A stretch of 64,000 nt of DNA from Felis catus (Eukaryota). Positions 19,420 through 62,142 of the stretch are shown piece after piece; position 1 is the stretch's first letter; every line of letters begins with the position of its first letter. The notes under the pieces are model-generated. The model was given only the letters and a program-made list of their open reading frames with translations, made no database searches and was not told where the DNA came from. The stretch lies in assembly GCF_018350175.1 (NCBI RefSeq), contig NC_058382.1, forward strand, positions 17,484,001 to 17,548,000. Reading direction: 5' to 3'. Position numbers and translations under genes: made by a program.

Positions 19420-23949
<4,530 letters not shown>

Positions 23950-35923: not shown

Positions 35924-36009
35924 GGCCGCAGCTGGGCCCAGGGCGCACGCAGGTAATGCCCGAAGAACAGTGGCGCAGCAGCACCTTTGCGAGATACGGC
36001 AGTGCAAGG

Positions 36010-36378: not shown

Positions 36379-36384
36379 TTTATT
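36379..36384 (-). terminator. Polyadenylation signal of the FCGBP-like gene
   Basis: TTTATT on + in an isolated AT-rich patch 120 nt past the predicted stop. Confidence 0.7.
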
Positions 36385-36503
36385 AAAACAGTCTCAGGAA
36401 GGTCCGTGGGTTCCCATCCCCAGGGCAGGTGTGCGTCGAGGGTGGGGGAGTGGGGGGGGGGGGTGGACGAGTCCCAGCCCTGGGCACACGCGGAGGTACG
36501 GCG

Positions 36504-39178
36504 TCAGACGGTGAAGTGTTGGGTCACGGCTGGAATAACAAGCTTCTCCGTGCTGTGGGAAGACCATCAGAGAGAGGGTATGGGCTCCAAGTCCCCAAAG
36601 GCAGCCTGTGGCGCAGGGAGTTGCGCTGGTCGCGCCCTCTGCCGAGAGAAGTCAGGTCCCCGGGCAGGAGAAGGTAAAGTTCTCACCAGTTGTTGAAGCC
36701 CCGAACCCGGCACGCGTGGAACACGTCGACTAGGCTGGCATCCCGGAGTCCTCCTGGGAGTATCAGGTCGTCGGCTGCAATTCCGTTGTAGTTCCCGCAG
36801 GCTGCCCGGAGGCGTCCTCGTAGCGCAGGGGAGGCCCGTAGGGACACAGCCCCCTCGGGCCCCACCAGCACCCGCAGCATGGGGGACCGCTCGATAACAA
36901 CTCGGGAGCCCTCAGCCCAGCGTACGACCACGCCCCTGCACACTTGCGCCGGGAGGCTGGCGGGTTGTCCATTCACCTGCAGAGAGGAGGCGAGTGAAGG
37001 GCGGGGATTAGGGCCCGAATCCGGAGGCGGGGCTCTGAAACTACTGTGAATCCTGCTGGGTGTCTCTATCAAAATGGCATACCCAGGTCTTTGCTAGAGG
37101 AAAAAGGTCTGGTATTTGCTTTCAAATCCTCCAGCACGAACAAAGCAGAGTGGGAGGAAAAGATGAAAGCAAAAATGGCAAAACATTTGTAACTGTAAGA
37201 GTTTCATGACACACCATTCTCTCTTCTTTTGTGATGCTTGAATTTTTCCATAATAAACTCTTTCCTAAAAGGGAGCTTTAGAGAACAAAGTCTCTAGAAC
37301 CAGTTGCATTTCTCTCACCTGTGTCTTCATAATCTAATAACCGTTTACACATACTCTGTGCCAGGCACTATTCCAAGTGCTTTAATATTTGGTTATTTAT
37401 TTTATAAGATAATGTATGACAGTATATTGCATTATGTAATGTAATTGGTATTTTAATATACTGTCACCTAACTTAATTATGTAATTAATGATATTAAATT
37501 TATAAATGATACTAAATCCCCACCAACACTCTGACAGGGTAGATCAGTACTGTATGCCTAGGTGCCTCTTGCCTTTTACTGATTAGGAAACTGAGGCCCA
37601 GAGAAGTAACATAGCTTGCCCAGGTTCACATAGCTGGTAAGTGGCAGAGCCAATTTTGAACCAAAGGGGTGTGATTTCATGACCTGTGTTCTTGACCATT
37701 CTGTTATATATATTGCCTCTCCATTAATAATATAAAAGTGACCACAAGAGCAATCACAGCTTTTTTTTTTTTTAACGTTTACTTATTTTTGAGAGACAGA
37801 GACAGCATGAGCAGGGGAGGAGCAGAGAGAGGGAGACACAGAATCCATCCGAAGCAGTCCCCAGGCTCAGACCTGTACACACAGAGCCTGACACAGGGCT
37901 CGAACTCATGAACTGTGAAATCATGACCTGAACCAAAGTAGGATGTTTAACTGAGCCACCCAGGCACCTGCAATCACAGTTTAAAAATTTTTTGTTTATT
38001 TACTTTTTTAATGTTTATATTTGAGAGAGAGAGAGAGAGAGAACTGGGGAGGGGCAGAGGGGGAGGGAGAGAGAGAATCCCAAGCAGGCTCCTTGCTGTC
38101 GGCGCAGAGCCCTACGTGGGGCTCAGTTCCACAAACTGTGAGATCATGACCTGAGCCGAAATCAAGAGTCAGATGCTTAACCAACTGAGCCACCCAGGCG
38201 CCCCTTAAGTTTATTTACTTTTAAGTACTCTGTACACTCAACATGGGGCTCAACTCACAACCCCAAGGTCAAGTCTTAAGCTCTTCCAACGGAGTCAGCC
38301 AGGCGCCCCAAGAGCTTCTATTTACTGAGCACTTCATATATGCCACACACTCTGCACGAATCCTCACAGCTACCCTATGTGGTACTGTTCTAATCACCAC
38401 TTTTTGTGGTTGAGCTGGGTTGTGGCAGAATCCTAGCTGCTCTCTTGCTGGACCATCCTCCCACTCTTACCAGTAGCCTCCTTCTATTTCTCAACATGGG
38501 GTTTCAGGTTTGTTTCCCTCTTACTTATAAACAGTATCCATTTTGCCTGCCAGATTCCAGTTCTGCTGCTCTCTGTTTTCCACGTGTCTTGGGGGAGCCA
38601 GGTGCTCTCCACTCTGGCCTCTCTACCCACTGGATCTCCAACCTCTCCTTGTCTGGCTCCTTCCCATCAGCACTTAAACATCCCAGGGTTTTTCCCATCA
38701 CAAAATCGTAATGGTAAACCAGTTTTAAAAGGCCTCTGCCTCTTCCTGGCTTATCTCTACTCTCACGTGTTTGACAAGGGCAGTTTGTATGTACAACTTG
38801 TCAAGAGAGCTGTCTATTCCTGCTGTCTCCATTTCTCAAACCTGCAGTCCAGGAGCTGTCCCCCTGCTGTGATTTCTTAAGTCACTAACAACCTCCCTGG
38901 CCCTAAGTCCAAAGACATTTAGTGGGCTATTTTAAACTCAACAGTTCATTTTCACCACTATTCCCCAAATATGCTCCCTCTGTTTTCCTGGCCTTGTTCT
39001 GTTCTCTTCCCAAGCTTAAAATCAGGTCTCAGCTCATTTGTCACCTTCTCCAGAAAGCCTTCACTGGTCTCCTAAACTGAGAGTATCTCCTCTGGGCTTC
39101 CACAGTCTACCTGTGGCTTCTCCCATTCCAGCCCTGATCACTCTACCTGGGCTACCTGGGCTTCCCCTATTAGAGCTC

Positions 39179-39221
<43 letters not shown>

Positions 39222-40549
39222 ATGACTACTCAGTCAGTAGTTCCCAGGAGTTGAGCAGCACTTGAGTCAATGTGGGGGATCAGTGGGTCCTGAGAAGTCC
39301 AGGGTGAAGTTTATATAGGGTCTAGAGAGGGTCATGGGAGAGCATGACAAGGACATTTAGCCAATGGAGGTCAATGTGAGAGCACAGTGATGGGAGAGTT
39401 CTATGTTAAAAGGGTATGGAATGCCAATGAGGGATCAAAAGGCCCCAGAGATCAGTGCCAGATTATAAAAAAGTCTTGGCTTTTACTGAGGAAGTCCCTT
39501 ACCCATATTTCCTGATTGGTTCCCACAGCTGCACAGCCATCCCTGAAGCCGATGATCACTCGTGGTTTGAGAGCAGTGCAGCTAGGACAGGGCAGGAAGT
39601 CAGCAATGACATGGAACCAGTCAGGATCCTGGGGCCTGGAACCCACCAATGTGGCTAGCTCATAGGCACAGGACATAACAGGAATGGGTGTGAGCCCACT
39701 GAAGCCATCAAAGGTGGTGAAGAGGCCCCCGGGCACTAGGCGACATGTAGCACCCTCCCTGGGCTCACACCACCGCACACCCCCATCCAGGATGCAGTCT
39801 GTGCCCTGTGGGCAGGAAAAGGGCTGGCACTGGAGGCCTTGACCATGCAAGCATATACAGCGTTCCTGGCAGCCAGGCAGGATCAGTGCCTCCCCAACCT
39901 GCAGAGAGAGAGAGACTCAAAATCAAATTCAAAAAACCTTATCAACAAACAGCTAAGCACATGTATAAAACATATCATGAAGGACTAAGTTCCTTAATAT
40001 ATAAAGAGTTCCTAGAAATAAAAAAGAAAAAGACCAATAAGTCAATATAAAAACATGAACAAAGCTATTCAGAAAGTTAATAGAAAAAGAAATATGTTTC
40101 TTAGGCATTTGAAAAGATGCTCAACCTCCTAACAAGACAAATACAAATTAAAAATCCATTGAGCTGTTTTTCTCTGAGATGGGCAAAAATAAAAAAAGTT
40201 TGATGAATTTCTCCAATTGTCCCCCAAATATCTATTAAGTGTTCTTTTTCAACTAGTATATAATCAAGCTTTGTGTACTGCGTTTGACTATTGTGGTTTT
40301 AAAGTCTGTTTCAATCTGGGACAATCCCTCTGCTTTTTTCACTGGTGTGTGAAAAACCTTAAGAGCTCTCTGCAAGTTCTGATGTGCGGCCAGTGTCAGT
40401 ACTAGTGTGGAGAGGACATGCAATGGCAGCTGTAGCAGCAGCTCTTATGCCCTGTTCCTCCCAGTGTGGGCATGTATTCATTCCTGGGGTTGGTTTGGGG
40501 TTTAAAGTTTATGTATTTATTTTGAGAGTGAGAGTGCAAGTGAGAAAGG

Positions 40550-40604
<55 letters not shown>

Positions 40605-43600
40605 GAATCCCAAGCAGGCTCCACACCACCAGTGCAGAGCCTGATGTGGGGCCTGAACTCACGAACCGTGAGGTCATAACCTGAGCCAAAGTCAGAAGCT
40701 TCACTGACTGAGCCACCCAGGCACCACTAGGGTTTAACCAATCATTTTTTTCGTATCTGGTGGCCTCGAATCTCCAAGACAACTATGTCAGTCATCCCCT
40801 GGGGGGCTTTTCTTTACCTCTGAATGGATTCAAGGAGCTGCAAAGCCTTGAACAGGACGCTTTGCTTGCCGAGGGTCCATCCATCTGTGGTCTTCTGGTA
40901 ACAGCCTTCCAGTTTCTTTGGGGAATTAGCCCCACTTTTCTGTCTGTGGAGTTTCTTAGGTGATATACCTACCCTCTGGCTTCAGCTCTGGCACATGCCC
41001 CAGGTCTGGCTAGTCAGAGACAAATCAGAGTACCCCATATTTCCTGGCCTCTCTGGTTTAGGGATGGGCAAGTGGGACAATAGGAGTCAGCACTGGGACT
41101 TCTGCTGGAACTACTGAGAGAGGGGTCTGTCCTTCCACTGAGATGGCTAAACTGTACATCATAAACTTGGAGAAGAAGGGGACCACCACTGCCCAACATG
41201 CAGAAGTTATTTGAAAATGAGGCTATGCATGTCTTCAAATATCCATTCTCCATTTCTTCCCCAGAATTAGAATTTTTGGCTGCATTCAGGGATACCCAGC
41301 TAAAGATACATCTTCCAGCCTCCTCTGCAGCCAGATGGGGTCCCTTCGTGAAGTTGTGGCCAATGTGATATGAACAGAAGTGATATGTGCTACTTTTGGG
41401 TTATGCCCTTAAAGAGCGGGGCCTGACCTCCCTGTCCCTTCTTTTTCCTGGCCAACTTGCTTGAATGAAGATGTGGTGGGGAGTAGATGATCACAATACT
41501 ACAGGGGAGGTAATGATAGAAGAAACCTGTGTCCCTGACTTGGATGAGCCAAGCTGGTTATTCTTGGACTGTTCATGAGAGAGAAATAAGCTTCTATCAA
41601 ATTTAAGCCACTGTAATTTTGAGACTGTTATAGCATTTGGACCTAGAGCCTACTTGATATAGAAGCTATCATAGAAAAAGGAAAAGACAGGGATGAAAGA
41701 CAGAAAGAAACTTGAGTTCTAGTGACATCATTTGAGTCCCTGAATCCAGCCATGCGTGAAAGCCTCAGATTTAAACAATTAAAGGTAGGTATGTTCCTTG
41801 TTGTATTTAAGATACTTGGCATCCTTTTCTTCATTTACAATGGCAAATGCTGACTGATATAGTGTGGTCCAGGGAACTTTTTTTTTCTTAAGTAGGCTTC
41901 ATGCCCAGCACAGAGCCCAATGTGTGGCTCAAATCACGATCCCGAGATCAAGACTTGGGCTAAGATGAAGAGTCAGATGGTTAGCCAACTGAACCACCCA
42001 GGTGCCCCTGGGGAACATTTTATGACAAGATATGGGAAACTTTGCACCCACCCACCCATGCCTGGGGACCTCTCTTACAGGGATGTAGCGTCCACTGTGA
42101 AAGCAGCCGCAGTGGTCCTGAGACACACAGTCTGTGCCGTCAAAAATGAATCCAGGGTCACACTCACAGCCCTCATAGCATTGGGTAGAACAGTGAGCAG
42201 GGCTGGTAGGCTGGACACAGCCCCCATCACAGGTCCGTGCGCAGATGCTGTAGTGGCTCCGAGGCGGACAAGTCAGAGCTGCAGATGGATGGCAAAGGCT
42301 GGTGCTTAGGACTCAAGTTTCCCTCTCCAATCCTATTGCCTCTTGCCCCAGTCAGGCTAGCTTCCCACTGCTTTAAAAAAAATTTTTTTTAAGACATTGA
42401 TTTAGTTTTGAGAGACAGAAAGACAGAGTGTGAGTGGGGCAGGGGCAGAAAACGAGGGAAACACAGAATCCGAAGCAGGCTCCAGGCTCTGAGCTGTCAG
42501 CACAGAACCCGATGTGGGGCTCAAACTCACAAACCATGAGATCATGACCTGAGCTGAAGTCAGATGCCTAACCGACTGAGCCGCCCAGGTGCCCCCCCAC
42601 TGATATTTTTCAACTTCCACACCTTTGAAATTCCAGTTCTCTCTCCCTTGGATGCCCTTCCCCCCAACACTGCTTAGTCAATTTCATCTACATCAGGACT
42701 GCTCTGATCCCCATCAGGAGAAGGGGCTCTTCCTGCTGCCTTCAACCTGCCCCGGAGGCAACCCACACCCAGCCAGAGCACTCACGGCAAAGCTTGGGTC
42801 CCCTCCAAAGCTTCACAGGGATGCCAGCTTCCTGACAGGCTGCAGTATATGCTGTGAGGGCATCGCAGAGACCAAGGTCCTGACCATGGGTATGACATAC
42901 GTCTTGCAGGCATATCCTGAGGAAAGCCTTGGGGCTGATATGGCCCAGGCAGCGGCCAAAGGGACCATCTGGTGCCTGTAGGAGTCTACACAGTTTGGGA
43001 GCATTGAAGATCTGGGCAAGTTGCGTGGGGCAGCTGATGCTAAAGCCAAGACTGGGCTGGGGCAGTGGGCAGGGGTTAGTGACCAGGCCCCTGGACCAGG
43101 ATCTTGTGTCTAGAGGCACATCAAGGGGGCCAACTTGGCCACCGAAGGCCCCACAGAGCCCCACCAGCTGGCCGTGGAAGGTGGAAGGCACAGTTAGGCG
43201 CACCTGGCTGCCCCAGTCATACATGATATGCAGCCCACAGGCAGTGTGCACCACCACGTGGCGGCCCTCCAACGTGGCCCAGGCCCTGCCCCCCGGCAGT
43301 ACCCAGGGCAGCCGGCAGTGTTCACCATCCACCTGGGGAGGAAGAAAAGGGTCAAGACTGAGGCTGAGAAGGTTGAGCCTGCTCCCACGCCTCCCAGTAT
43401 CCTGGACATCCCTCCCAGCTGTGCCACAAATGAACTGTGAGAGTTGGGTGGAAAAGTTAGCCTCTCTGAACTTTAGTTTCTTTATTTGTAAAATGGGAGG
43501 ATCAAAGTACCTACTTCCTAGGGCTGTTGGGAGAATTAAATAAATCAACAAAAAGTACTTAGAAAAATGCTCAGCATGTGGGAAGTGCTTAATGACCTAG

Positions 43601-46600
43601 GCCAAGACCACCCAAATGCCAGTCCACTCACAGATGTGTGAGAAAGCTGGCTGAGTAAGTCACTGAGAATTTTTTTTTTGAGCTTGTTATGCAGCATTAG
43701 CTGACTAATACAGTTGCTATGAAGATTAAATGAGATGGTACAAGTAGTGCTCAGAACAGTGCCTAGCACATAATTAGCACTAAATAGGTCCCAGGGCCCT
43801 TTCTCTGGCCTTCTCTTCCTCATGAGGTCTCACCACACTTCTTTTTGAAGCTCTCTCTACTTCTGGCTGCCGAATCTCACCACACTCCTGCTTTCTCTGC
43901 TCTGTTTCGCCTAAGTTTTCATCCCCACCCATCCTAGAAGGCCCTAGTGATCTGGCCCCATCACTTCTCCAACCTCATTATCTCTTCTTCAACCCCTTAC
44001 TCACTTACTTGCTCACTCACAAGCTACACTGACTTCCTCCTATTCCTCCAACACACCAAGCACCATCCCAATTCCCTGACCTTCGCACTTTGTGTTCCCT
44101 CTGCCTGGTTTGCTCCCTCCCAGATATTCACATGGACCCCTCCCTTACCTCCTTCAGATCAGTGACTCAAATGTTACTTTGTCAGTAGAGTCTTCCTCAT
44201 CACCTATTCAAAATCCTAAACCTCTTTACACTGTTTCTGTACTCTCTCTTCCTTGTTTTATTTTTCTTTATAGTTTTCTTTTTCTTTCTTTTCTTTTTTT
44301 TTTTTGAGAGAGAGAGAGTCAGAGACAGCATGAGGTGGGGCCGGGGGTGGGGAGTGGGGGTGGGGGGCAGAGAAGGAGGGAGAGAGTAAGAATCCCAAGC
44401 AGGCTCTGGCACTGCCAGTAGTGGAGCCCAATGCGGGGCTCATACCAACCAACTATGAGATCATGACCTGAGCTGAAACCAGAGTTGGACGCTTAACCCA
44501 CTGACCCACCCAGGTGCCCCTATTCTTCGTTACAGTTCTAAACTCATCATCGGATGTACCACCTATTTTACTTATTTATATACTTATCATCTGTTTCCCT
44601 GGAGGAATGTGAGCTCTCCCAGGATTTAGTCATCATCAAATCCTCCGGCCTTTCCTGGACCACCAAGAGACTCTCCATACAATTTACTGAAATAATCCTG
44701 AATGACTAATTTTATTCAATCCTGGGTAGTAGGTGATAATGCATATCTAACAGCTACCCTTTAGTGAGCCATTACTGTGTCCCACGCAATGCTTCCACCT
44801 TGTCACATATTTGCACCATCTCTTAAGTCTTAAGGGACAGCCACGCCCACGTTACATATGGTGGGGGAAACAGAGGAACCTCCAGGAGGAAGAGGGTGGG
44901 GTGTGAGCGCGGTCCAGTGAACCCCTACCGTGATGAAGCCGACAACTGCGCGGTCTAGCTGCAGGTGGTGCCCGGAGAGGTTGAGGTGCAGACTGTGTAG
45001 CCCGGCCCCATCGCGGGCCACGTCCAGGCCGAAGGAACAGGGACCCCGGCGTGGGGTGCGGGCGAGCACTTGCAGGCAGCTCTCAGGAGAGAAGGGCGCG
45101 GGCGGGGGCAGCGTGTGCGTGCGGCCGTCGAAGGCGAGCACGTGCGCGGTCCCGGCCAGGGCGCAGCTGCCTCGGCCGTCGGGCAGGCAGCGGCGCACGC
45201 CCCCGCGCAGGCCGCACACTCGCCCGCGCCCGCACGGCCGCGGCGCGCACGTCACCACGCCGCCCGGGCGGCAGCGGCAGCGGCGTGCGCAGCCTGGCCC
45301 CGGGTACCAGACGGCGCCTAGAGCTCGGTAGCGGCCGGCGCGAAAGCAGCCGCACTTGGCCGCAGGCACGCAGGCGGCGCCGCTTAGCAAGAAGCCCGTG
45401 TCGCACACGCAGCCCTCACAGCAGCGGCTCCCGCAGGCGCCGCGGCCAGAGCGGCTCTCGCTGCCCGCGCACGTGGCTGGGCAGCACGGGCCGCACAGCT
45501 CATAGTGCGAGTGCGGCGGGCACCGTAACGCTGGGGAGACCCGCGGGGGTGCGAGGGCCAGAGCGAAATGAAAGAGATGGAGAGACGCGGGAAAGAAATA
45601 GCGGGGGACAGAGAAAGGGGTAGGCCGGGAGAGAGAAACCGACGCGAAGACAGAGACGGAGGGAGGATAGAGGGTGGGGGTGAGTGGAAGAGCAACATGG
45701 CGGGGAGAGAGGACGAGGAACGGAAAGTGGGAACACCAGGTAGAGATAGTGAGGCGCAGAAAGGGAGACACAGAGCGACACAGAGGCACGGGAGAGACAG
45801 ACAGAAAAAGAGACGGACACAAAAGACAGGAAGATCTCGTTAATTAAACTGCTGTCCCATCCAGGTCTAACTCTTCTTCAAGTCCCACCCTTCTTCACCT
45901 GGCTCCACCCAACCAGGCCTGAACTTCTTCATTGGTCCTCCCGCGTCCGTCCCTCGGTGTCCCAAATCCCAGCTCTTAGGAGTTTCATCCACTATGTATG
46001 CCAAGCCCCGCACACTCACGACAGAAGTCAGGCGTCCTCCACGGCCGCAGGTGCACATCCAGAGCCTGACAGGCGACAGTGAAGGCGGCCAGGGCTCGGC
46101 AGACGATGGGACGGGCTCCGTGGTGGCGGCACACGTCGTCCAGGCAGTTGTCCAGGAATGGGATCGGGTCCAGCGCAGCGTAGCATGGCCCCAAGGGACC
46201 CTCGGCCCCCGCCAGCAGCCCGCAGTACGCGTCTCCAGCGAATCGAGTGCGCGTGGACACTGGACACTGGTTATGGCAGAGGGGCCCGCAGACTGGGCCA
46301 CAGCCTGGCACTTCTGCCACCTTCCAGATGTCGAGCAACGGCACCGTGGGGCTGCTCGGGCCTCTTTGGGCACAGAGTCCACACAGGTAGGGTCCGTAGG
46401 GCCTCGGCAGCGTTACACGTGCCAGGCTGTCCCAATCGTAGGTGAGTGAGAGGCCGAAGTCCGTGTCTACACAGAGCTGGCGGCCTTGGTAGTAGGCACG
46501 GAGGCAGTGGCCGTGAAAGAAGGGCAGCGATTCCAGAATTCCGTCCACCTACAAGGGAGGGCATGCAGGTATCAGCAGGGGAAGGATGTAGTGGCTGTCG

Positions 46601-49600: not shown

Positions 49601-52600
49601 TGGTAGAATTGTCAGCTTGAAGTTGCCAAAGCCTTGCGGCTACCACAAGAGGAGAATCTACTTGAGAATAAAGCTAACAGAGAGAGAATGGAAGGGAAGA
49701 AGAAGATGGACAGGGAGAAAAATGGACTTTTTAAATCTGCAGTTGAAAATTCTTAATCTAGCTAAGACTGGAGATAGAAACACCCTCAGTCTTTGCAGTT
49801 ATATGTGCTCCAAATCATTTATTCTTTCTCCCCTCAGTTTGAGTTAGGATGCTGACATCGCTATTAAGAGTCCTGCTGGATACAGTGGCCGCATTGTGTA
49901 CCCATGACCGGCTGGTTGGGTCAGGGCTGGATAAATGACCCTGACAGACAGAGGTGAGGGTGGCCATTGGTCTGTAAGTTAAGAGCAAGCCAAACATTCC
50001 CTCCAAGAACTTTTGAACCTGGAGGCAGAAAGAGAGAGACACTGACACCAAAATGATAAATTGAGGTGGGGCCAAGAGTCCATGAGGATCATGGAGGATA
50101 CACGTGGACATAGAAACGTGAAGTTGATGAGAACCTGTTAAGTGAACAAATATTCAGATGCCAGCTGAGTCATTTTCTAGGTGGGTGATACTGATCAAGT
50201 TCCTTAACCACCTATGCCTTGGTTTCCCTCATCCATAAAATGTACTTGCTTGATGGGGCTGTTGGGAGAATTGAGGGCTTAGCACCGAACGTGTATTCAG
50301 TAAGGTCAGCTGTTCTTTTCATGTTATTACTGGAACTATTTTTACATTATTGTTGGAGAGACACTATAGCATAGGGGTTGAGAGAGAGGATTCTGGAGCC
50401 AGGTGGAAAGGCCAGTTCTGCCCCCTACTGGCTGTGAGATCTGGGGGGATTCTCTGTGCCTCAGTGTCCTCAACTACAGGAGGCAGACGATTATGCCATC
50501 TCCTAGAACAGTTCTAAGATGGAGTGGGCTGACTTCAAGCACACAATACAGGTTCTCAGATCTAGTCTTGCATCCGGGTCTCCTGGAGGGCTTGTTAAAA
50601 CAGGTTGGTGGCTCCCACTCCAGAGTTTCTGATTAAGTCTGGGGCAGGGCAAGACTTTGCATTGTAAACAAGCCCTGAGTGTTGCATTGTAAACAAGCCC
50701 TGTAAACAAGCTGATGCTGCTGGTCCAGGGACTAGGATTTTAACGCAGCGCCTGATATTGAATGAGTGCTCTGTAAACGTTACCTAAGGGATAAAATCAA
50801 ATCTGTTTTCCCAACCACAGCGTGCATGGGACTCTGTCCTGTTTGGTGCTGTGTCCTTAAAATAGGCCGACACATAGTAGGTCTTCAACTAACACCTGCG
50901 TTATGACTGAAGACCAGACCAGTCTCCCGCTTTGGGACCCCACCCCGCGGGGGCGGCTCGTAAAGCCCTCTGGCAGGGGACATACGGCAAAGGCTGGGAG
51001 CCCTCCAGGGCCGCATATCCGCACCAGCCGTCTGGCAGGCAGCCACGTAGGCTTGCAGGCAGGCACAGAGCACTTTGTGGTTCCCGCGGGCGCGGCCCAC
51101 GTCGGCCACGCAGGCCTGGTAGAAGGGCTCCGGCGGCAGGAATGCGTGGCAGGGTGCCAGGGGGCCGCTGGGCTCGCGCAGGAGGTCGCAAGCGCCACGC
51201 CACGCTGCACCCGCGTCCTCGGTGGCCGGGAGGCAGCCCGAACCCGGGCAGGGACGCGGCGCGGCGCAGGGCCCGGGCCTTGGCAGCTGCAGGTCATCCG
51301 TCGCGTTGCCGTTGAAGTTGCCGCAGAGGCCGCGCGTGAGGCCGCGGTAGGCCGCAGGCAGCTCCACGCTCAGGTGGCAGCAGAGCCCGAAAAGCAGGCG
51401 CGGGCCTCCACGCACCGCGAGCACCACAGATGCGCCGCGCGCGAAGGCGCGCACCCTGCCCCCGCTCAGCGCGAAAGGCAGGCAGCGCCGCACGCCGTCC
51501 ACCTGCGGGCAGGGGTGGGGCAGCCTAGAGTCAGGGGGGAGGTCCGGGTCCGGAAGAACTGGGAGAAGACTAGTGGGGAGGAGTAGTGCGGACAGTGGGT
51601 GCGCCAGAACAGGGGAAGAGTGGGCAGGGACTGCTGGAGTGTGAAGAAGGACATGGGGTGAAGGAGAGGGGTCAAGGGGCAGGGCGTTCAAGGCAGTGCT
51701 TGGGTGTGGGTATAGTGGGAAGGTGTGGGGAAACCTGGCAAGGGGAAGGAGAGTGAGGGGAGGGAGAGTGGTGAAATGGGCCTGGAGTGCAGGGACAGAG
51801 GGGAAATTCCTTACTCAGGGACCGAAGAGAGATCTGAGGGCATCTGTGGACCTGGGGGTTGGGGCAGTAGAGCTGGGGAAGAAGAGGGAGGGGATGTGGG
51901 GACAGGAGGAGGAGGAGAGAGGAAGAGGGACCACTTTGGAGAGAAAAAGAGCGGGAAAGCTGGAGAGGAAGGGCAGTGGTGAGGTAGGGGCACCAGAGAG
52001 GGGGTTTGGGCAGCCTGGAGCAGGGGTCAGGGAAGGCTAGGTGGGTGTTGGTAAGAGGTAATGGCAGACGTAGAGCCTGAGAGGGTGCATGGAGATCCAG
52101 GTGGAGGAGGAAAAAAGGCAGAGAGGAGAGATGAAGGCTGTGGGGTGGGAGAGAGGGACAGGTGGGGTGTAGGTACGGGTGGTAGACAGAGAAAGAGGCG
52201 AGGGAAGATGGAGAGACAGCCTGAGCAGCTTGGAACAGGGATGTGCAGACCCAGCTACTGAGAGAGGGATTGAAAGGGGAAGGGGCAGAGAGAGGGAGGA
52301 AGCAGAGAAGGGAGGAGGAGGAGATTATCGGAAATGAGGTTGTTGGAGAGAGGAGAAAATCGGAAGGCGATACTCAGAGATCCCACTGGGCAGAACAGAG
52401 ACTGCCAGGCAGCTGAAAGGAGGCGGGTGACAGGGCGGGGGCTCACCGTGATGTATCCCCAGTCCTCGCAGTCTAGGCCGAAGCGGTGGCCATGCGCGCG
52501 GAGCAGCACGCGGCAGAGTTTGGGCATCCGTGGACCTGTCTCCAGCACCACCTCGAAGGGCCTCCCACCCCGAAGTCGACCCGTGCCCGTGCCTACCAAT

Positions 52601-55600
52601 GAATAGGTGCAGGCGCCCGGGAGGTGGAAGGTGGTGCCGTCGAAGGTGCGATAATAGAGTCCGTCTGTGGCAAAGCAGAGGCCTGGGCCGCCCCGGGCTG
52701 CGCGGCAGGGTTTGCAGGCCACCCGGCCGCCGGGGTGACAGCGGCAGCAGCGACCGGTCGCGGTGGGAGGGGGCGGCAGCGAGGCGCCGGGTTCCAAGTA
52801 GCGGCCGGCGCTCAGGCAGCCGCACTGAGCAGTGGGCACACAGATAGCGCCACTCAGCACAAAGCCCGCGTCGCATACGCAGCCCTCACGGCAGTGCCCA
52901 GCGCGATCGCAGCCGGGTGGTGGCTCCAGCCCCGCGCAAGTGACAGAACAAGCCGGAGCGCACAGCGTGTAGTGCGAGTGTGCGGGGCACAGCGGGCCTG
53001 CGGAACCAGTAGGAATGGAAGGTTACTTTGCGGCCTGTGGCTGTTGGGACTCTCACTCCCTAACTCTGGGGCTAGGATGGGGTATCTGGGGCCCTGCCGG
53101 GGCAAAGCTCTACCTGGGCAGAGCTGCAGGTACCTTCAGATAGCTAAGGATGCGGTGGTTAACCATGCCTCTGATGAGGCGTAGCTAATCTGTAGGGCTT
53201 GGGACGGATAAGAGCTTAGGGGCTAGACCATGAACAGGTCTGAGTCCCTGAGAGGTAAGAGCTGAAGGGTTGGACCATAATCAGGGCTGAGAAGAGGGAA
53301 GGATAAGAGTTGGGGGGCTGGACTTAAATCAGAATACACCTGCCACTTTAGCATGGGCAAAGGTTGAGGGTCTGGTGGGGAGTGGAGGGATGGCTGAAGG
53401 CTGGTGCAGTGGGAAGTACAGGGTCTCAGGGATACATTGTGCAGGGAGGAGCTGGCACTCTGGGATGAGCAACAGCCAAGGAGCCACATCTCAGTCAAGA
53501 GTGGGGCCAGGTTCCCCAGATGAGCAAAGATAGAGAGAGACGCTAGACTGAATCCCTAGGCACTCACTGCACAGGCTTGAATTCCGCCATTGGAAGACTT
53601 GGCCACCCAGCAGCTGGCAAGTTTCACAGTAGAGGCTGAGCATGGGGCAGGGTCCAGTGCCTAGGCATACATCCACCATGCAATCTTGGACATAGGGGCT
53701 TGGTGCCAGCATCTCATGGCACAGCTGGAAGGGCCCCAGAGGGTCCAAAAGGATGTCACAAGGGTGGGCAAAGTGGGTTGGGCTGCTGGTGGTTGGCAGA
53801 GTGACACAAGATGGTGGCAGTGGTGGCATCTTGTCAGCAGCATCCAGGCACCCAGTCGAGGAATCCACCAAATATCTATGGCCAAAGGCCCAGGCCATTG
53901 CATCCTCAGGCAGCTTGGTGCCCAGCACGGTTCCAGGCACCTGGAGGTCATTCATGGGGTCCCCATTATAGTCAGCGCACAGCCCCACCACATGGCCCTT
54001 ATATGCTGCTGGAAGATCCAGTACTATGCGGATCCCAGGGGCATAGGTCACACGCAGGCCAAAGGAACAGCTGACCACAGTGTCCCAGCCATGGCGAAAG
54101 ATGAGTGTATTGTTGCTCAGAGCCTGGAATGGTAGATTCTGCCAGTCACCATTCACCTGTGCAAAGAGGATATGTCAAGGTGGGGCTCTAGGGACCCCGT
54201 ATCATTACCAAGGATGCCAGTGTCCCTAGGTAAGGGTATAAGAGCAGGGCCCCCAGAAGGTCTTTTTGAAGGACTGTCTACAATGACCACCCCCAACCCA
54301 ACAAATAAAAGTTTGGGGTGCTGTCCACAATACTGATACTTTTTCCAACAAATACTTGGATGGTGAGAACTGTGGATTCTGGGGTTTGGGGCTATAGTAT
54401 TCCTGGATCAGATTTGGGGAGATGAAAGCCACAGCTTCTGGAAGTGACACATGTGCAGTGTCTGGCACATGTCTGGTCAATAAATATTTGTTGAGCTAAT
54501 GCATGGATGAGTGAATGAGGCTCATAGGTCAAGTTAGGCTGTAGAGTCCTAGGGATGCTGGGATTTCTAGGTATGGCAGGGGCTTCAGGATACTATGCAA
54601 ATGGTTCAGGGAAGGGAGGTCTGTCCATAGCATATATAAATGTTGAGGCTGCTGTGCATGGTCTAACCATATTTGCCCACAGCATCTGGGGCTGGGGTTA
54701 TAAGAATTTGGGATGAGGGTTTGTAAGCTTTTGGAGTTGGGGATTTGGAATTCCTGGATTGGGTTTAGGGGGTGCCCGGGACTGGGGCTAGAGTTGAGTC
54801 TAAAGTTCAGTTAACACATGTAACTTAGAATAGTGCCTGGAACACAGTAGGTATTCAGTAAGTGACTGTTAAATGAATGAATGAGTGAATGAATGAATGA
54901 ATGAATGAATGAATAAATGGGATTCTTGGGTCAGGACTGGAGTTTCAAGATCCCAGAATCAGGACTGAAAGCTCTGGTGTACTGGGGCTCACAATGAAGG
55001 TTCCAGAATTCTTGAGTCAAGGCTAGGAGTTTTTGTTCCAAGACAATCCAGGCCAGGAGTATTTGTTTCAAACACTTAGGTTGAACTATATGAAATTGCC
55101 GCATTTGTAGGAAAAAACACCAAATATTGGCAGCTTCGTGTCCAATTTTCATAACTACATGTGCAGGACAGTGACGTGTGGTAGTTAAGTGTCCTTTGAC
55201 TTCGGAGCCATGTCACCTGGGCTCAAATCTTGGCTCCTGGTTTGTCTCACTTTGGCAATTTGTTTAACTTCTCTGTAAAATGAGAGAAATAATAATATGC
55301 ACTGGAAAGAATTGTTGTAAGGATCAAGTAAGGATTTGTAATTGTGCCTGGCACGTGTTGGGGTAGACCGTGTTCCTTGGGAAGGCAGAGAGGTCTTAGG
55401 TTCTGGGATTAAGGTCCCTTGGGGCCACCCATAAAGCCGTAGTCAGGGCTAGGCCCCTGGTCCCAAGAAAAGCATAAAATCTGGTCCTCACTCACATGCA
55501 TTCAGGGGCCAGGCAAATAGCTAAATGAGTAAAGTGGAGAGGGTGGGATGTGCTGGGGACTGTGACAAACTAGAGAGAAAGTACGTGCCCCTCGCTAGAG

Positions 55601-58600
55601 AGGGAAGTCCCAAACATACGTGGCCATGAGAATAGGTGACTAGTTGCCAGGGCTTCTAGTTTCTCAAGAGATACCATAAGTCCAGCCTTCTTTATTTAAA
55701 AATGGTAATTCAGTAAGAAATTTAAAATATGGCCAAGGCAAACTGCAGAGAGAAAGTTACTGACAGCCTCTGGGTTCTGTCCTCTGTGGTCGGTGAATAC
55801 TCACCCCCACAGCCCCACAGCTCCTCTCCCAGTGTCCCTATCTTTATTTGTCTTTCCTACCTTGATGAGAAAATTTGTCATGTTGAAGTGGTGTCAGAGT
55901 CATTGGGAACTTGGAATTACATTTCACAAATGAGTAGTTGAGGTCATGTATTTTTTTGATGATTTACAGAGACAGCATAAGAGACCCTGGAGCCCAAAAT
56001 GCCAAGGTTTAAATACTAACTCTCGTATTTATAAGCTGTGTGACCTTGGGCCAATGGCCTCACCTCTCTGGGGCAGTTTCTTCATCTGGAAAATGGTAAT
56101 GCCTATTGTATCTACCTTAAAAGGACTCTTGTGCATTATGTGTTATTTCATTGGCACCTAGCGCGTGTGCCTCCCGAGTGGCCTTTCCAACAGCACCAAA
56201 ACTTCTTTTCCTGGGGAAATTATGGAGGACTGGGAAAGGGGGTTCTGGACTGATGGTTTGCTCCTGAAGTGTTAAGGCTTGAGTTATAATTTGGGGGTTA
56301 GTTTTGGGGGGGTTAAAGTTAGGTGACTGGGTCAGAGATCATGGGGCAAGAGGGAGGAGGTGCAAGATACTGGATTTAAGGTCCAATGTCACAGGACAAA
56401 AACTCAAGGTATGACCCTAGGGTGAGGTTAGGGGGATCTTGGGATCAGGTTTGGGAGTCTTGAGATGAGGACTCTGGGTCAGAGGACATAAGGTGAATGT
56501 GTGGGCAGGGCTGGGGTTTTCTCACCAGGACACGACCAGGTTCCTTGGGGTCCAGCCTCAGATGGAATCCAGACACGTGTACTTCGAGGCTATTCGGGAC
56601 GCCATCAGGACTGGTGCCCAGGAGCACACGGAAGTCAGTGAGCTCCTGTGGCGCTGAAGAACTGCGGCCGCTCAGCAGGTACACGCAAGAGCCAGGGAAG
56701 CGAAAACGGCGCCCATCAAAGGTGATGTAGTGGCCTCTGCCAGCCACCACGCATGTGGCCATGCTCGAGGGCACACACGTGCGCAGGTTGTGTGACAGAA
56801 CGCAGCGCTCATGCGGCCTGCACCCCGTCTCAGTGCAGATCACGCTCCCTCCTAAGGCTGGGCAGAGGCAGCGGCGGCGAGTGCAGCCCACACCCTCCCA
56901 TAAAGCCTCGCCTGGTGCCAGCAGACGTCCCTGGTGCACGCAGCCACAGCCACCAGGCCCTGGGCGCCGGAGGACACAGGCTGGGCCGCTGCGAACATAG
57001 CCAGGATTGCAGGTGCACGTCTCCCCGCAGGGCAGCGGGCAGGACGCTCCCAAGGGCCCCAAGCATGTCTCTGGGCAGGAGGAGCCACATAACTCATAAT
57101 GGCTGTTTTGGGGGCACTCGATAGCTGGGGGAAGAAGGGGAGAAAGATGGAGGGGGAAGGAGTGTTTACATCAGGACCTCCCAGTCTGGTTCCAGAGACC
57201 TAAGTATTTAGCCATCCCTAGAATGGAGATGTTCCTGCCTTCATTTTCCAAGAGTCGTGCCCAGGATCCTGGGGGTCCTCATCCCCTAGAATGGAGGCTT
57301 TCCAGCAATCTCCATCTCACAGAGTAAAGAAGTTTCTATCATCAGAAACCAGAAGTCCTCTTTCAGAACCTTAAAATCTGGCCCTGGGACACAGAACTCT
57401 CACCCCAGACCCTGGAGTCCTCCTTACCTAGAGGACTTTTCCATACACCAAATCCAGGAATCTTGCCTTTTAGAATTAACTAATTCTGAATCCCAGGGCC
57501 TGGAAGCCTTCACCCTCAGGACCCAAAGAATCCTGACCCCAAGACCTAGGGGTTCCAGCCCCCAGAAACAAGAAATCCCACCACTGGGTGGAGGAGTCTC
57601 CATCCCCAGACCCAAGGAACCCTGCCTCCTGAGCCCCTGCAGTCCCATCCCAGGGACCCTGCAGCCTTGTCCTAGGAATCAACTCCAGCCAGCATCAGGG
57701 AGTGCCACCCCTAAGTCCCAGAATCCCCTTCCCTAGTAGCCCATAGCCTTTTGCATCTAAGGGTCACTCACGGCAGCCAGTCTGGGATCTCCAGGAGTTG
57801 ATGCTGACACCTAGGCGCTGACACGCATGTGCGTAGACCTGGAGCATCAAGCAAAGAGTTGGTCGGTTGTTGGAGAAGGGGCAGATCCAAGCACTGCAGC
57901 TGATCTCGAAGGGTGCAGGCCTCAGCACATGGTGGCAATGGCTAAAGGGCCCGTTCAGAGCTGTCAGGATGGCACAGGGCCCCGGGGTCTTCGGTGGGGA
58001 CGATGGCTTGGTGCAGGGAGCAGCCCAGAGGGAGTGGCACGGGTCATCAGGCGGCTGCAGGGTCCAAGTGCGCAAGAAGGCGCGCAGGTCTGGACCGCCC
58101 ACATCATCGATTGGGTCACTGTTGAAGTTGCCACACAAGCCCACCACGTGTGCACGGTAGCCGTCGGTTACTTGCAGAGACAGGGCGTGCTGCCAGTCGT
58201 ACACTAGGCGCAGTGCAGGTGGCTCTTGCTCCAGACCTGCCTCTGCCCATAGTTCTGAGCTACGGAAATACAACCGCAGCCTCCCGTGGAGCAGCGTCAC
58301 TGGCAGCCTAAGCCGCTGCTGGTTCACCTGCAGGGGTGACCCAAGAGCAGCAATCACCAGAGAAAGGGTACATTCCTAAGCATTTAAGGTGGGGTGAGGG
58401 ATGAAAGCTGAGGGGGTTGGGTGTTGGGATACCGAGGGAGTGGGGGTCTGGGAGCTGTAAGGAGGAAATGAGTTAAGATATGAAAAGAACTTGGAACAGA
58501 GTCCACCTCATGGTTAAGTGTCATATGAGGAGGATTTGCTATGTTTGATGTCCCCTAACCCTGGCATCTGGAACCTCCAAATTCTGTGAGCTTTGGACAT

Positions 58601-59761
58601 ATCCTAGGACCACATGCGGCCGCTGGCATGTCTGCAATTTCTCCTCAGGGAACGTTTGGAGGCATTGTTCTTAGGCTTTGTTCTGGCTGGAATGTCACTC
58701 CATGCACTAACCAGGAGTCTTGTTTCCAATACCCAGATGCGACCTCGTGCAAAACTCAGAAGCCTTCCTTTCAGGAATCTTGATAAGTAATTCCACTTCA
58801 GTTAATAGGAGAGCCTTCATCCAGGACCCCAGTGTCTTTCCCCCAATTACCAAGAGCCTTCACCGAGAGCTTCCAGGTCATGTGGATTGGACTTCCATTT
58901 TTTGTGTCAGTTCACCAAGAAGGTTACCAACCCACCTTTTACTCTCACTCACTGCCTCCACCCTGGTCCAACCATCATCTCCTGCCTGGACAATTTCAGC
59001 AACCTCCTCACTGGTCTCTCAGTGCATCCTGAACAAGCCCCATAGTCTGGTCTCCACAGGGAAGCCACAGGGATCCTGTTAACACCCAAGTGGTATTTCA
59101 TCCCTCCTCTGCACACAACCTTCCCTTGGCTTCCACCTTACACAGAATAAAAGACAAAGTTGTTGCAATCTGCCCCCCATGGTCTCTCGCTCTCCTCTGT
59201 ACCACAATCCCTCCCTCTGCTTCAGCCTGGACTTCTTGCTGTTCCTCTAACGTGCCTGTCAGATTCTCACCTTAGGCATTTGCTGTTCCCTCTGCCTAGA
59301 ATTCTCTCAGATACACACATGGCTCTCTCCCTCACCTCTTTTAAGACTTGGCTCAAGTTTCATCTTCTCAGGGAGGCCCTCCTACTTAAGACTCTACTCT
59401 CAGACATCCTGATGCCACTTTTCTGCTCCATGTTTTCCTCCTTAGCATGTATCACCTGCTAAAATACTACATAATTAACTTATATGTATTACTGGTATCT
59501 CTCTGCTAGAATATAAGTACCATGAGAACAAGGATTTTTGTCTGTCTTGGTCACTGATATGTCCTCAGTGCCTTAAACAAGGTCTGGTACATAATAATAA
59601 AACATTCCAGGGTGCCAGGGTGACTCAGTCCATTAAGTGTCTAATTCTTGATTTTGGCTCAGGTTGTGATCTCATGTTTCATGATGAGCCCTGTGTTGGG
59701 CTCTGCGCTGACAACACAGAGACTGCTTAGGATTCTCTCTCTCTGTCCCTCCCCTGCATGT

Positions 59762-59800
<39 letters not shown>

Positions 59801-62142
59801 ATAAATAAACATTAAAAAAATTCCTTAGTTGATGAAGAAACTCAGGAGTGTCAGGTACTTGGGAGATGGGGGCTTATTTGATGACAGTGTAAATCTGAGG
59901 TCCTGAGAATTTGAAGGTACTGGATACCTGGGTTGGGGTGCTGGATTCTGGAGAGCCATAAGAGCACTTGGGGAACTCCCGACTCCTGAGTGACAGGGTG
60001 GGCTCCCAAGTGGCATGTGGAGGGGAGTATGGAGCATCATGGCTCATGCATCAGGTCCTAGCATCATATACTTCTGAGCTTTCCATACCTATTTTTTTAA
60101 NNNNNNNNNNNNNNNNNNNNNNNNNNNNNNNNNNNNNNNNNNNNNNNNNNNNNNNNNNNNNNNNNNNNNNNNNNNNNNNNNNNNNNNNNNNNNNNNNNNN
60201 NNNNNNNNNNNNNNNNNNNNNNNNNNNNNNNNNGGCTCCACACTATCAGTACAGAGCCTGATGTGGGGCTCGAGCCCACAAACTGTGAGATCATGACCTG
60301 AGCCAAAGTCAGACACTCGACAAACCAACCGACCGAGCCATCTAGGCGCCCCACATTAGCCTATTTGATCCATACCACAGTCTGATGACTTAGGTCTTTG
60401 TATCATCCTGATTTCACAGATGAAGAAACTAAGGCTCAGAGAGGTTAAATAACTTGCCTAAGGTCATACAGATAACAGGTGGTCAACCTGGGATTTGAAC
60501 TCAGGCCATCAGGTTTCTAGATCACATTCTTTCTAACATGGTACTGAGGAGTGACTCAGTATGTCCATAACCTCATAGGTTTGCTCTCTCTAGCAATCCT
60601 GATTAAATGTAGTCTAGTCTCCACAACCTTCCAATCAGAGCAATGCGGTCAAACCTTTCCCGAGGAGAAACTGTGGACATGCCAGTGTCCATACCTGCAT
60701 GTGGTCCTAGGCTATGTCCAAAGCCCAGGGGACTTAGAGGTTCCAGTTGTGTCAGGAGACAATAAACATAGCAAACCCACCTCATATGACACTTACCATG
60801 AGGTAGACTCTGTTCCAAGTGCCTTTCATATGTTAACTTATTCCTGCTTCATAGGAACCTGTTAAGGTAGGGCTAGAGATCCATTAGCCCTTATCCACAA
60901 TCCCCAAATGCAAAAGCGGCCTGAAGACTGAAAGATGTTTCGTGTGTTTGATGTTAAAATGTAATTGGCACCAAAAGCTCACCTGAACTCATGACATGGC
61001 CGCTTATGGTCTTAATTTATCCCAGTTAGTGTGAATATTCGGATATTTCACTGCAGAGATACTAATGTTTGTAATTATGTGACATCCATTGGGATTATCA
61101 TATAACATATGGCATTTGCACGGTATGACCATTTGAAATTTCAAAATCTGAAATGCACCTGGCCCCAAGCCTTTTGGATAAGGGACTGTGGACCTATATA
61201 ATTGCCTCCACTGTAGAGTTGACAAAAATGAGGGACAGACAAGGATACAGTTTCCCAGGATCCCACACATAATTATTCTTACCCGGACAAAGCCGAACTC
61301 ATGTTTGACAGCAGTGATGGTGATGCCAAAAGCGCGCATTGTGACAAAGCGCATGGGCTGCCTCCCTCCAGAGCAGGCGATCCACAGCTGGAAGGCAGGG
61401 AGGCCACTGGGTAGGGCCTGAGGGCAGTGGCTCAGGATGTAGGTACATCCCCCAGGCACAGGGAAAGAGTAGCCATCAAAAGTGTAGATGTATGGTAGCC
61501 CGGAAGCCCAGCAGGTACCCCCTGGGACGCCCCCCTGCCTCTTACTAGAGACACCCACTGTCTCTGATTTGGTCTGAGACACCATTTTGGACCCAGACAC
61601 AGTTTCAAGTTCCTGTTTTGCCATAGTCACAGCCTCTAAGCCTGGTTCAGTCCCTGCCACCACCTTGAGCCCCAACTTGGCCACTGAGACAGTTTCTGAC
61701 CTAGACCCAGACACTATCTTGGGTTTGGACTCTGGTTCAGCTATGGGCATTGGCAGGGGTAAAAGTACAGGTGCCGATAAAGCCACAGTCAGGGTTTCGG
61801 GAATTGGTTCTTTTACAGACAGAAGTCCAGGTTCTGGTTCAACCAAAGCTATAGATTCAGGCTGAGGTTCATTCAAAACCCCTTGTGCAAACCCTGGATA
61901 AGCCATGGTCACTGCTACAAGTCCTGGTTCTGCTTCAGGTGTGCTTTCTGATCCTGGTTTGGCCACTGCCATGGTTTTAGAGCTGGAGATGGACGCTGTT
62001 TCGAGGTCCTTCAGAGATATTGTCTTGGAACTGAACACGATGTCAGACCCAAATGTGGTCTTCGTGCTGGCCACACACTCAGGTTTGTGCTTTACAAGAT
62101 GACATGTGGTCCCATCGGAGCATGCGTGGTCCTTACAGGATC
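36504..62142 (-). CDS. IgGFc-binding protein (FCGBP)-like multi-VWD/C8/TIL protein, 5'-partial, ~2,436 aa in window
   Basis: 16 exons in transcription order: 62142-61283, 58327-57772, 57124-56526, 54156-53568, 52997-52447, 51502-50986, 48977-48778, 48658-48517, 48392-47710, 46548-46020, 45530-44929, 43332-42786, 42278-42079, 39898-39503, 36976-36687, 36552-36504 (7310 nt). All GT-AG, phases compatible, no internal stop. Repeated C-x-x-x-G-x-x-x-x-x-TFDG, GLCGNFN, GPFxxCH..Y..AC..WR and CPxxSHYxxC motifs. The last small exon is inferred; without it the frame ends FNNW* at 36683. Confidence 0.9.
37761..38310 (-). mobile_element. Cluster of three Can-SINEs (approx. 37761-37970, 37990-38204, 38205-38310)
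   Basis: Three reverse SINE heads; the first is flanked by CAATCACAG direct repeats. Confidence 0.85.
39181..39222. repeat. (AGT)n microsatellite
   Basis: About 14 perfect trinucleotide units. Confidence 0.95.
39960..40205 (+). mobile_element. Old L1 (ORF2 3' region) fragment
   Basis: Translates to GLSSLIYKEFLEIKKKKTN, similar to the younger L1 at 62.9 kb ([14 protein letters not shown]). Confidence 0.7.
40500..40726 (-). mobile_element. Can-SINE with (GA)n
   Basis: Reverse SINE; (AG)n at 40553-40598. Confidence 0.85.
42380..42597 (-). mobile_element. Can-SINE
   Basis: Reverse SINE consensus. Confidence 0.85.
44290..44520 (-). mobile_element. Can-SINE
   Basis: Reverse SINE consensus with T tail. 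Confidence 0.8.
47190..47403 (+). mobile_element. Can-SINE
   Basis: GGGCGCCTGGGTGGCTCAG head, AATAAATAAAC and A-rich tail. Confidence 0.85.
50548..50735. mobile_element. MER5A-like hAT element with internal tandem duplication
   Basis: GGTTCTCA..CTTGTTAAAACAG..CAGAGTTTCTGATT..GATGCTGCTGGTCCAGGGAC; TGTAAACAAGC occurs three times. Confidence 0.6.
54872..54915. repeat. (TGAA)n tract, typical of an L2 3' end
   Basis: Follows AGTGCCTGGAACACAGTAGGTATTCAGTAA. Confidence 0.7.
59610..59820 (+). mobile_element. Can-SINE
   Basis: Head, (CT)n, A tail; ATTCC/TTCC-like flanks. Confidence 0.8.
60234..60352 (-). mobile_element. Can-SINE (3' part inside an N gap)
   Basis: Reverse head at 60352. Confidence 0.8.
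60874..61198. mobile_element. Tigger/mariner-like MITE
   Basis: Imperfect terminal inverted repeats TAGAGATCCATTAGCCCTTATCCA ... TGGATAAGGGACTGTGGACCTATA with TA flanks. Confidence 0.55.

What the first reader, a model, noticed from the sequence alone, without database searches (positions are those of the whole stretch)
36379..62142. Intact, highly divergent FCGBP paralogue (~2,436 aa in window, 6 VWD) next to SDHAF1
Seen in sequence: 16 minus-strand exons with canonical splice sites join into 7.3 kb of coding sequence with no stop or frameshift, ending at its own poly(A) signal. The domain order is Cys-rich module, linker, [VWD-C8-TIL]x3, extra TIL, [VWD-C8-TIL]x2, terminal VWD. Established knowledge: VWDs split by a phase-0 intron before V(N/D)G, a phase-1 intron between C8 and TIL, and a terminal C8-less VWD with no TM or ZP domain fit FCGBP better than TECTA or ZAN. 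FCGBP proper lies megabases away in human, among other neighbours. I recall no named protein-coding gene between SDHAF1 and LRFN3 in human. Inference: this is an old, lineage-restricted secreted mucus/matrix scaffold retained in this carnivore and essentially uncharacterised. It may exist as an automated LOC model.
Basis: partly seen in the sequence, partly recalled or inferred. Interest (0 to 1): 0.9.

Follow-up and report, generated by a model that had tools for sequence, protein, structure and literature searches.

The report
Unnamed FCGBP-like mucus gene beside SDHAF1
This cat-family genome carries an intact copy of an old, unnamed sister gene of the gut-mucus protein FCGBP; databases hold it only as automatic "IgGFc-binding protein-like" predictions from other mammals, so it is real and unstudied but not a new kind of gene.

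Summary
On the minus strand, 16 exons with AG/GT borders (62229 to 36504) join into 7,395 coding bases (2,464 codons). There is no internal stop, the stop codon is the gene's own, and AATAAA lies 120 nt downstream. The assembly gap at 60101-60233 lies inside intron 1 and hides no coding sequence. Domain order is a 4-Cys module, a 176-aa Cys-free spacer, three VWD-C8-TIL units, an extra TIL, two more units and a terminal VWD. SDHAF1 lies 0.5 kb downstream on the same strand and is 98% identical to the Panthera uncia protein, so the genome is a felid.

The gene is not FCGBP proper, which is 37% identical and separately annotated in cat. It is the orthologue of automatic "IgGFc-binding protein-like" models in seals, mustelids, dogs, a shrew, an elephant and a marsupial (about 85% to 55% identity). 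A tree places this clade as sister to all mammalian FCGBP, so the duplication dates to the mammalian stem.

No member of the clade has a GDPH self-cleavage motif. All members keep the two cysteines that dimerise FCGBP. The window keeps 191 of 192 conserved cysteines, and the felid branch is the shortest in Carnivora.

Expression, dN/dS and the 5' exons could not be tested. Two notes from the same scan, on this same stretch, agree.

The parts
61283..62229 (-). Exon 1 in the window; it starts in phase 1, so earlier exons lie beyond 64000. Encodes the 4-Cys module (equivalent to the small N2 module of FCGBP), a 176-aa Cys-free spacer rich in S/T/P/E, and the first half of VWD1.
   Evidence: AG acceptor and GT donor. 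Seal P0122 residues 456-753 align at 73%. VWD profile 1-72. N2 alignment. Spacer composition.
60101..60233 (.). Assembly gap (N), inside intron 1. No coding sequence is expected in it.
57772..58327 (-). Exon 2: second half of VWD1 plus C8. It starts VNQ in phase 0.
56526..57124 (-). Exon 3: TIL, TILa and the first half of VWD2 (phase-1 start).
53568..54156 (-). Exon 4: second half of VWD2 plus C8.
52447..52997 (-). Exon 5: TIL, TILa-like stretch and the first half of VWD3.
50986..51502 (-). Exon 6: second half of VWD3 plus C8 (donor GTATGT).
48778..48977 (-). Exon 7: TIL.
48517..48658 (-). Exon 8: TILa (weak donor AAG|GTGCCC, supported by the orthologue alignment).
47710..48392 (-). Exon 9: Pro-rich linker, the extra TIL, and the first half of VWD4. 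The extra TIL may be what remains of the fourth FCGBP unit.
46020..46548 (-). Exon 10: second half of VWD4 plus C8.
44929..45530 (-). Exon 11: TIL, TILa-like stretch and the first half of VWD5. This TIL carries the shifted cysteine (C to R, with a new C six residues on).
42786..43332 (-). Exon 12: second half of VWD5 plus C8.
42079..42278 (-). Exon 13: TIL.
39503..39898 (-). Exon 14: TILa and the first half of the terminal VWD6.
36687..36976 (-). Exon 15: second half of the terminal VWD6. It ends in phase 2 inside the last Cys codon (donor GTGAGA).
36504..36552 (-). Exon 16: completes the Cys codon, then encodes 15 residues (TEKLVIPAVTQHFTV) and the stop TGA.
   Evidence: Acceptor CAG. The tail matches seal, mustelid and shrew C-termini.
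36379..36384 (-). AATAAA poly(A) signal, 120 nt after the stop.
35567..35926 (-). Neighbouring single-exon gene SDHAF1 (118 aa, LYR family), same strand, about 0.5 kb downstream of the poly(A) signal.
   Evidence: Pfam Complex1_LYR. 98% identical to Panthera uncia SDHAF1.

Best explanation
This is the 3' five-sixths (2,464 of about 2,900 codons) of an intact felid gene. The gene is the orthologue of the unnamed mammalian 'IgGFc-binding protein-like' gene that lies beside SDHAF1.

That gene arose by duplication of FCGBP in the mammalian stem. It then lost the VWD-C8 part of the fourth unit, gained a flexible Cys-free spacer between the small N2 module and VWD1, and lost every GDPH self-cleavage motif.

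Inferred working: it is a secreted, disulfide-rich mucosal scaffold protein. Unlike FCGBP, it stays a single uncut chain. Like FCGBP, it probably pairs tail to tail through two disulfides in the terminal VWD.

Shown here: gene structure, intactness, orthology, tree position, loss of the motif, and retention of the cysteines. Inferred only: secretion in the felid, dimerisation, tissue of expression and role.
For: - Sixteen exons with canonical borders and no internal stop over 7.4 kb.
- The model is colinear with the seal model P0122 at 85% identity. There are only six short in-frame indels and none falls at a junction.
- 191 of 192 conserved Cys columns are kept. The one lost cysteine is offset by a new one six residues away.
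- The gene tree follows the species tree, and the felid path from the Carnivora node is the shortest: 0.079, against 0.106-0.15 for the caniform rows (seal, jackal, mustelids).
- Felid-seal identity (85.4%) equals that of FCGBP proper between cat and sea lion (85.8%).
- The clade is sister to mammalian FCGBP with 100/99 support. The module tree pairs L-D2 with F-D2, L-D4 with F-D5 and L-D6 with F-D7.
- All nine clade members examined have no GDPH. Cat, rodent, marsupial and platypus FCGBP each have five.
- Cysteines equivalent to mouse C2462 and C2581, which make the FCGBP dimer (PMC11796319), are conserved.
- Orthologues carry a hydrophobic N-terminus and the IgGFc_binding domain. The window part has no membrane-span-like segment.
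- The best solved relative is mouse FCGBP, 8rde.
- A dog-saliva proteome lists one peptide that exactly matches VWD1 of the dog orthologue (PMC6279226).
Against:
- The RNA-labelled runs that hold the locus hold 49-83% of its sampled words, while exons make up only 36% of the stretch. They therefore also hold introns, and could be DNA carry-over.
- About 455 N-terminal codons lie outside the window and could be broken.
- dN/dS was not computed, because no orthologous DNA could be fetched.
- No felid protein model of this gene appeared in the protein collection.
- The saliva peptide is a single low-score hit.
- The dimer prediction gave no answer.
Confidence: 0.8

Rival explanations
1. The felid copy is a very recent or unexpressed pseudogene. 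The in-window part looks intact, but the gene is dead through a lesion in the unseen 5' exons or promoter.
For: No felid model was found among long proteins or among exon-1-sized ones. The protein search found no long models in many mammalian orders, so losses seem common. No expression evidence was obtained.
Against: Simulation gives under 1% chance of an open frame at 0.5% neutral divergence. All 30 intron-end dinucleotides are intact. 191 of 192 Cys columns are kept, with a compensating shift for the other. The felid branch is the shortest in Carnivora.
Confidence: 0.12
2. It is the one-to-one orthologue of FCGBP itself, or of another named VWD gene (ZAN, TECTA), merely misjudged as divergent.
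For: It has the same domain vocabulary and a terminal VWD without C8, and its orthologues carry the IgGFc_binding N-terminal domain.
Against: Cat and lion have a separate 3,000-aa FCGBP that is only 37% identical. The tree separates the two clades with full support. ZAN and TECTA score far lower. No MAM, NIDO or ZP domain was found in the exon pieces or in the seal orthologue.
Confidence: 0.01
3. The gene is real and expressed but is not a mucus scaffold. It could be a reproductive-tract or sperm-surface adhesion protein like zonadhesin, or a matrix protein of a special organ.
For: It evolves fast (85% felid-seal, 56% eutherian-marsupial) and is retained patchily, as is typical of reproductive and immune genes. 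Tissue is unknown.
Against: Its nearest relative and nearest solved structure are FCGBP. It evolves no faster than FCGBP within Carnivora. The only tissue hints are saliva and gut RNA libraries, and both are weak.
Confidence: 0.15

Closest known systems
FCGBP (IgGFc-binding protein), for example cat P0178 and the mouse structure 8rde
   Same: - IgGFc_binding N-terminal domain (seen in orthologues) and the small 4-Cys N2 module.
- Repeated VWD-C8-TIL-TILa units.
- A terminal VWD without C8.
- Both dimerising cysteines.
- No MAM, ZP or membrane span.
   Different: - Only 37% identical, and a separate clade.
- Six VWDs instead of seven, with an orphan TIL where the fourth unit would be.
- A 176-aa spacer between N2 and VWD1.
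- No GDPH motif, against five in FCGBP.
- A 15-residue tail after the last cysteine.
- A different locus, beside SDHAF1.
Automatic gene models 'IgGFc-binding protein-like' (for example Halichoerus grypus XP_035923990.1, Mustela nigripes XP_059237595.1, Lutra lutra XP_047565327.1, dog isoform X5, Sorex fumeus, Sminthopsis crassicaudata)
   Same: These are orthologues. They are colinear exon by exon, 55-86% identical, with the same spacer, the same missing GDPH and the same C-terminal tail.
   Different: The window is from a felid, for which no such model turned up. The window lacks the first ~455 codons. Several of the models are fragments of the gene; ferret has three pieces.
Zonadhesin (ZAN) and alpha-tectorin (TECTA)
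   Same: Tandem VWD-C8-TIL units.
   Different: ZAN and TECTA are 27-30% identical to the seal orthologue. ZAN has MAM domains; TECTA has NIDO and ZP domains. None of these occurs here or in the orthologues.

Membership tests
FCGBP family (broad sense: FCGBP and its vertebrate paralogues) | Tandem VWD-C8-TIL(-TILa) assemblies ending in a lone VWD. | tested here: met
   Pfam on the exon pieces finds 6 VWD, 5 C8 and 6 TIL. The last VWD is followed only by a 15-residue tail.
FCGBP family (broad sense: FCGBP and its vertebrate paralogues) | N-terminal IgGFc_binding domain (PF17517) after a signal peptide. | not testable with these tools
   This part lies beyond the window.
FCGBP family (broad sense: FCGBP and its vertebrate paralogues) | Small 4-Cys N2 module before VWD1. 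| tested here: met
   It aligns Cys for Cys with cat, camel, rodent, platypus and turtle FCGBP. Here it is followed by a 176-aa spacer instead of VWD1.
FCGBP family (broad sense: FCGBP and its vertebrate paralogues) | The two cysteines of the terminal VWD that form the intermolecular dimer (mouse C2462 and C2581). | tested here: met
   Both columns are Cys in the window and in seal, shrew and marsupial orthologues (PMC11796319). Dimerisation itself was not shown (one search gave no answer).
FCGBP proper (one-to-one orthologue) | Groups with mammalian FCGBP in a tree, with high identity to the same-family FCGBP. | tested here: not met
   37% identity to cat FCGBP. It forms a separate clade with 100/100 support, sister to all mammalian FCGBP.
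FCGBP proper (one-to-one orthologue) | GDPH autocatalytic cleavage motif at the start of VWD1-5. | tested here: not met
   There is no GDPH in the window model or in eight orthologues. Cat, rodent, marsupial and platypus FCGBP have five each.
Zonadhesin | MAM domains, a mucin domain and a C-terminal membrane span. | tested here: not met
   No MAM hit in the exon pieces or in the seal orthologue. No membrane-span-like segment.
Alpha-tectorin | NIDO domain and C-terminal ZP domain. | tested here: not met
   No NIDO or ZP hit. The protein ends 15 residues after the terminal VWD.

The most novel reading that the evidence does not exclude
The SDHAF1-adjacent clade would be a functionally distinct, non-self-cleaving counterpart of FCGBP. 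It would be a single-chain, spacer-bearing mucus cross-linker of saliva or gut that the mammalian ancestor possessed. Several orders would then have lost it independently, possibly including those of the usual model species, which would explain why it has never been studied.
Probability: 0.35. Interest if true: 0.55.

Novelty: new member of a known kind. Interest (0 to 1): 0.4.

Why it matters
[quoted passage not shown] This gene is a natural sister that has done without that cleavage since before marsupials and placentals split, while keeping the dimerising cysteines. That makes it a ready-made comparison for what the cleavage is for.

It also shows that cats, dogs, ferrets, seals, shrews, elephants and marsupials may have a mucosal protein for which this protein search found no long model in primates or rodents. 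That matters when these animals serve as models for gut, airway or oral disease.

In practical terms, the felid copy deserves a proper gene model.

Tried and rejected
No synteny check or orthologous DNA could be had in other species.
- Two scans of metagenome contigs for orthologous DNA, one with exon 9 and one with the orthologue alignment A1, found nothing. dN/dS was therefore not computed.
- Complex prediction on two copies of the seal terminal VWD gave no answer. It is no evidence either way.
- Pfam on the ten longest ORFs of 1-35 kb found nothing, so no neighbour beyond SDHAF1 was identified.
- Literature searches for a named FCGBP paralogue at this locus found none.
- The rodent 'IgGFc-binding protein-like' model that was placed in the trees (Dipodomys) groups with FCGBP proper. 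It is not this gene.
- My first 15-exon model ended at the in-frame TGA at 36685-36683. I rejected it once the orthologue tails revealed exon 16.
- The joined spliced protein has no reference, so it was never sent to a database search. Searches were made exon by exon or with orthologue ids. The joined model was used only in local scripts for frame checks, alignments and trees.
- Human sequence was not examined.
Full report
**What is there.** Stop-free minus-strand pieces between 36.7 and 62.3 kb are rich in cysteine. Pfam finds VWD halves, C8, TIL and TILa in them, in a regular order. A splice-site scan and tblastn of the grey-seal protein P0122 gave a first model of 15 exons with an open frame.

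Aligning that model with orthologues showed that they carry a final cysteine and a 15-residue tail where my model stopped. The apparent stop sits just inside the intron that follows a perfect donor (CTG|GTGAGA). A 49-nt exon 134 nt downstream completes the Cys codon and encodes the same tail.

- Every exon has an AG acceptor and every intron starts with GT.
- It holds 2,464 codons plus a stop at 36506-36504.
- AATAAA lies 120 nt further on, at 36384-36379.
- The first exon begins at 62229 in phase 1, not at 62142. The gene therefore continues beyond the window.

**The assembly gap.** The N run at 60101-60233 lies in intron 1, more than 1 kb from either exon. VWD1 is complete across exons 1 and 2, and the seal protein crosses that junction without a break. 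No coding sequence is expected in the gap. I did not try to fill it.

**Neighbour and species.** A single-exon LYR-family ORF at 35926-35567, on the same strand, is SDHAF1. It is 98% identical to the Panthera uncia protein, 88% to the hyena protein and 86-90% to caniform proteins. The window therefore comes from a felid. LRFN3 is not in the window. The ten longest ORFs of the first 35 kb gave no Pfam hit.

**What the gene is.** A full search of protein representatives with exon 1 found the VWD part in many proteins, but the spacer only in anonymous short ORFs. tblastn of the hits against the window singled out a ferret protein at 79% identity and one other at 49%. All the rest were near 34%.

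Cluster look-up named the relatives 'IgGFc-binding protein-like' in ferret, mink, stoat, otters, badger, black-footed ferret and grey seal. A search with the seal protein added fur seal, harbour seal, Weddell seal, dog, golden jackal, Sorex fumeus, Loxodonta africana and Sminthopsis crassicaudata. After these there was a sharp drop to 38% or less, for FCGBP proper in cat, lion, fox, camel, dolphin, bats and rodents, then ZAN and TECTA.

The window model is 85% identical to the seal protein, 81-83% to the mustelid proteins, 69% to Sorex and 55% to Sminthopsis. Against seal it has only six short in-frame indels, none at an exon junction.

**Family tree.**
- A tree of single VWD-C8 units pairs the second unit with FCGBP unit 2, the fourth with unit 5 and the terminal one with unit 7. 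Units 1, 3 and 5 fall with the unit-3/6 type.
- Domain maps show six units against seven in FCGBP, with an orphan TIL after unit 3. This suggests that the VWD-C8 of the fourth unit was lost.
- A careful mixture-model tree of the four matched units, rooted on frogs, puts the clade as sister to all mammalian FCGBP, platypus included. Turtles and a gecko fall outside, with 100/99 support.
- The duplication therefore dates to the mammalian stem. The long stem of the clade (1.05) shows fast change afterwards. A long branch would be drawn towards the root rather than to this place, so the position is unlikely to be an artefact.

**Differences from FCGBP.**
- No member of the clade has a GDPH motif at any VWD start. 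Cat, wood mouse, bilby and platypus FCGBP each have five.
- The 4-Cys module aligns with the small N2 module that directly precedes VWD1 in FCGBP. Here it is followed by 176 Cys-free residues with 22% S+T and 10% P.
- Both points agree with two notes of this scan on the same stretch.

**Retained features.** The two cysteines that form the intermolecular bonds of the FCGBP dimer are kept (mouse C2462 and C2581; PMC11796319; alignment). There is no membrane-span-like segment. Orthologues carry the IgGFc_binding domain and a hydrophobic N-terminus. The nearest solved structure is mouse FCGBP, 8rde.

**Is it alive in the felid?**
- The window keeps 191 of 192 cysteine columns conserved among orthologues. 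The one lost cysteine (C to R in the TIL of unit 4) is matched by a new cysteine six residues on, and the total stays even at 200.
- The orthologue tree follows the species tree. The felid path from the Carnivora node (0.079) is shorter than those of dog, seal and mustelids (0.106-0.15).
- Felid-seal identity equals that of FCGBP proper between cat and sea lion.
- In simulation, the frame stays open in 9% of runs at 0.25% neutral divergence and in under 1% at 0.5%.
- These results argue for selection up to the present or very near it.

**What is missing.**
- There are no spliced reads. The run search listed four RNA-labelled runs from two studies (gut and mammal metatranscriptomes). They hold 49-83% of the sampled words, although exons make up only 36% of the stretch. 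Introns are therefore present too, and DNA carry-over cannot be excluded.
- Orthologous DNA could not be fetched, so dN/dS is not given.
- No felid protein model was found.

**Tissue hints.** A dog-saliva proteome lists one low-score peptide under 'IgGFc-binding protein-like' (PMC6279226). It matches VWD1 of the dog orthologue exactly and differs from FCGBP. This is a lead, not proof.

**Verdict.** The gene is real, apparently intact, old and unstudied. It belongs to a known family and is already present in databases as automatic models in other species. The joined spliced protein was used only in local scripts. Database searches were made exon by exon or with orthologue ids, and no human sequence was examined.

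Noticed in passing
window 44929-45530 (exon 11, model residue 1797): One conserved TIL cysteine is replaced by Arg, and a Ser six residues downstream has become Cys. This looks like a compensating cysteine shift specific to this felid sequence.
   Followed up: partly
window 43000-52997: Small RNA-labelled gut and mammal metatranscriptome runs (0.9-1.9 thousand million letters) hold 49-83% of the sampled words of this locus, introns included. This could be unspliced RNA from a well-expressed gut gene or host DNA carry-over.
   Followed up: partly
window 61283-62284: The protein collection holds seven anonymous ORFs from short ENA and Logan contigs that match exon 1, spacer included, at 85% down to 49% identity. 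Five of them (65-85% identical) are open over 87-100% of it; the two weakest cover about 73%. Further unnamed species therefore carry this exon intact.
   Followed up: no
protein cluster of P0092: A 62-aa 'hypothetical protein' of the dolphin Sousa chinensis sits in the same 90% cluster as the ferret orthologue. Cetaceans keep at least a fragment of the gene, although no long model was found for them.
   Followed up: no
window 5673-5812, 6081-6212, 28479-28624, 63645-63774: Four further assembly gaps of 130-146 N. The last one lies upstream of exon 1 and could in principle hide part of the preceding intron or exon.
   Followed up: no
window 1-275, minus strand: A dense run of AATAAA/ATTAAA matches, that is an A/T-rich simple repeat at the window start. 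It inflates the count of poly(A)-signal-like hits (125 against 32 expected).
   Followed up: no
window 22001-26000: A G+C-rich stretch (0.59-0.61) with strong negative GC skew at 22-24 kb. It may be a CpG island or exons of a neighbouring gene. The long ORFs there gave no Pfam hit.
   Followed up: partly
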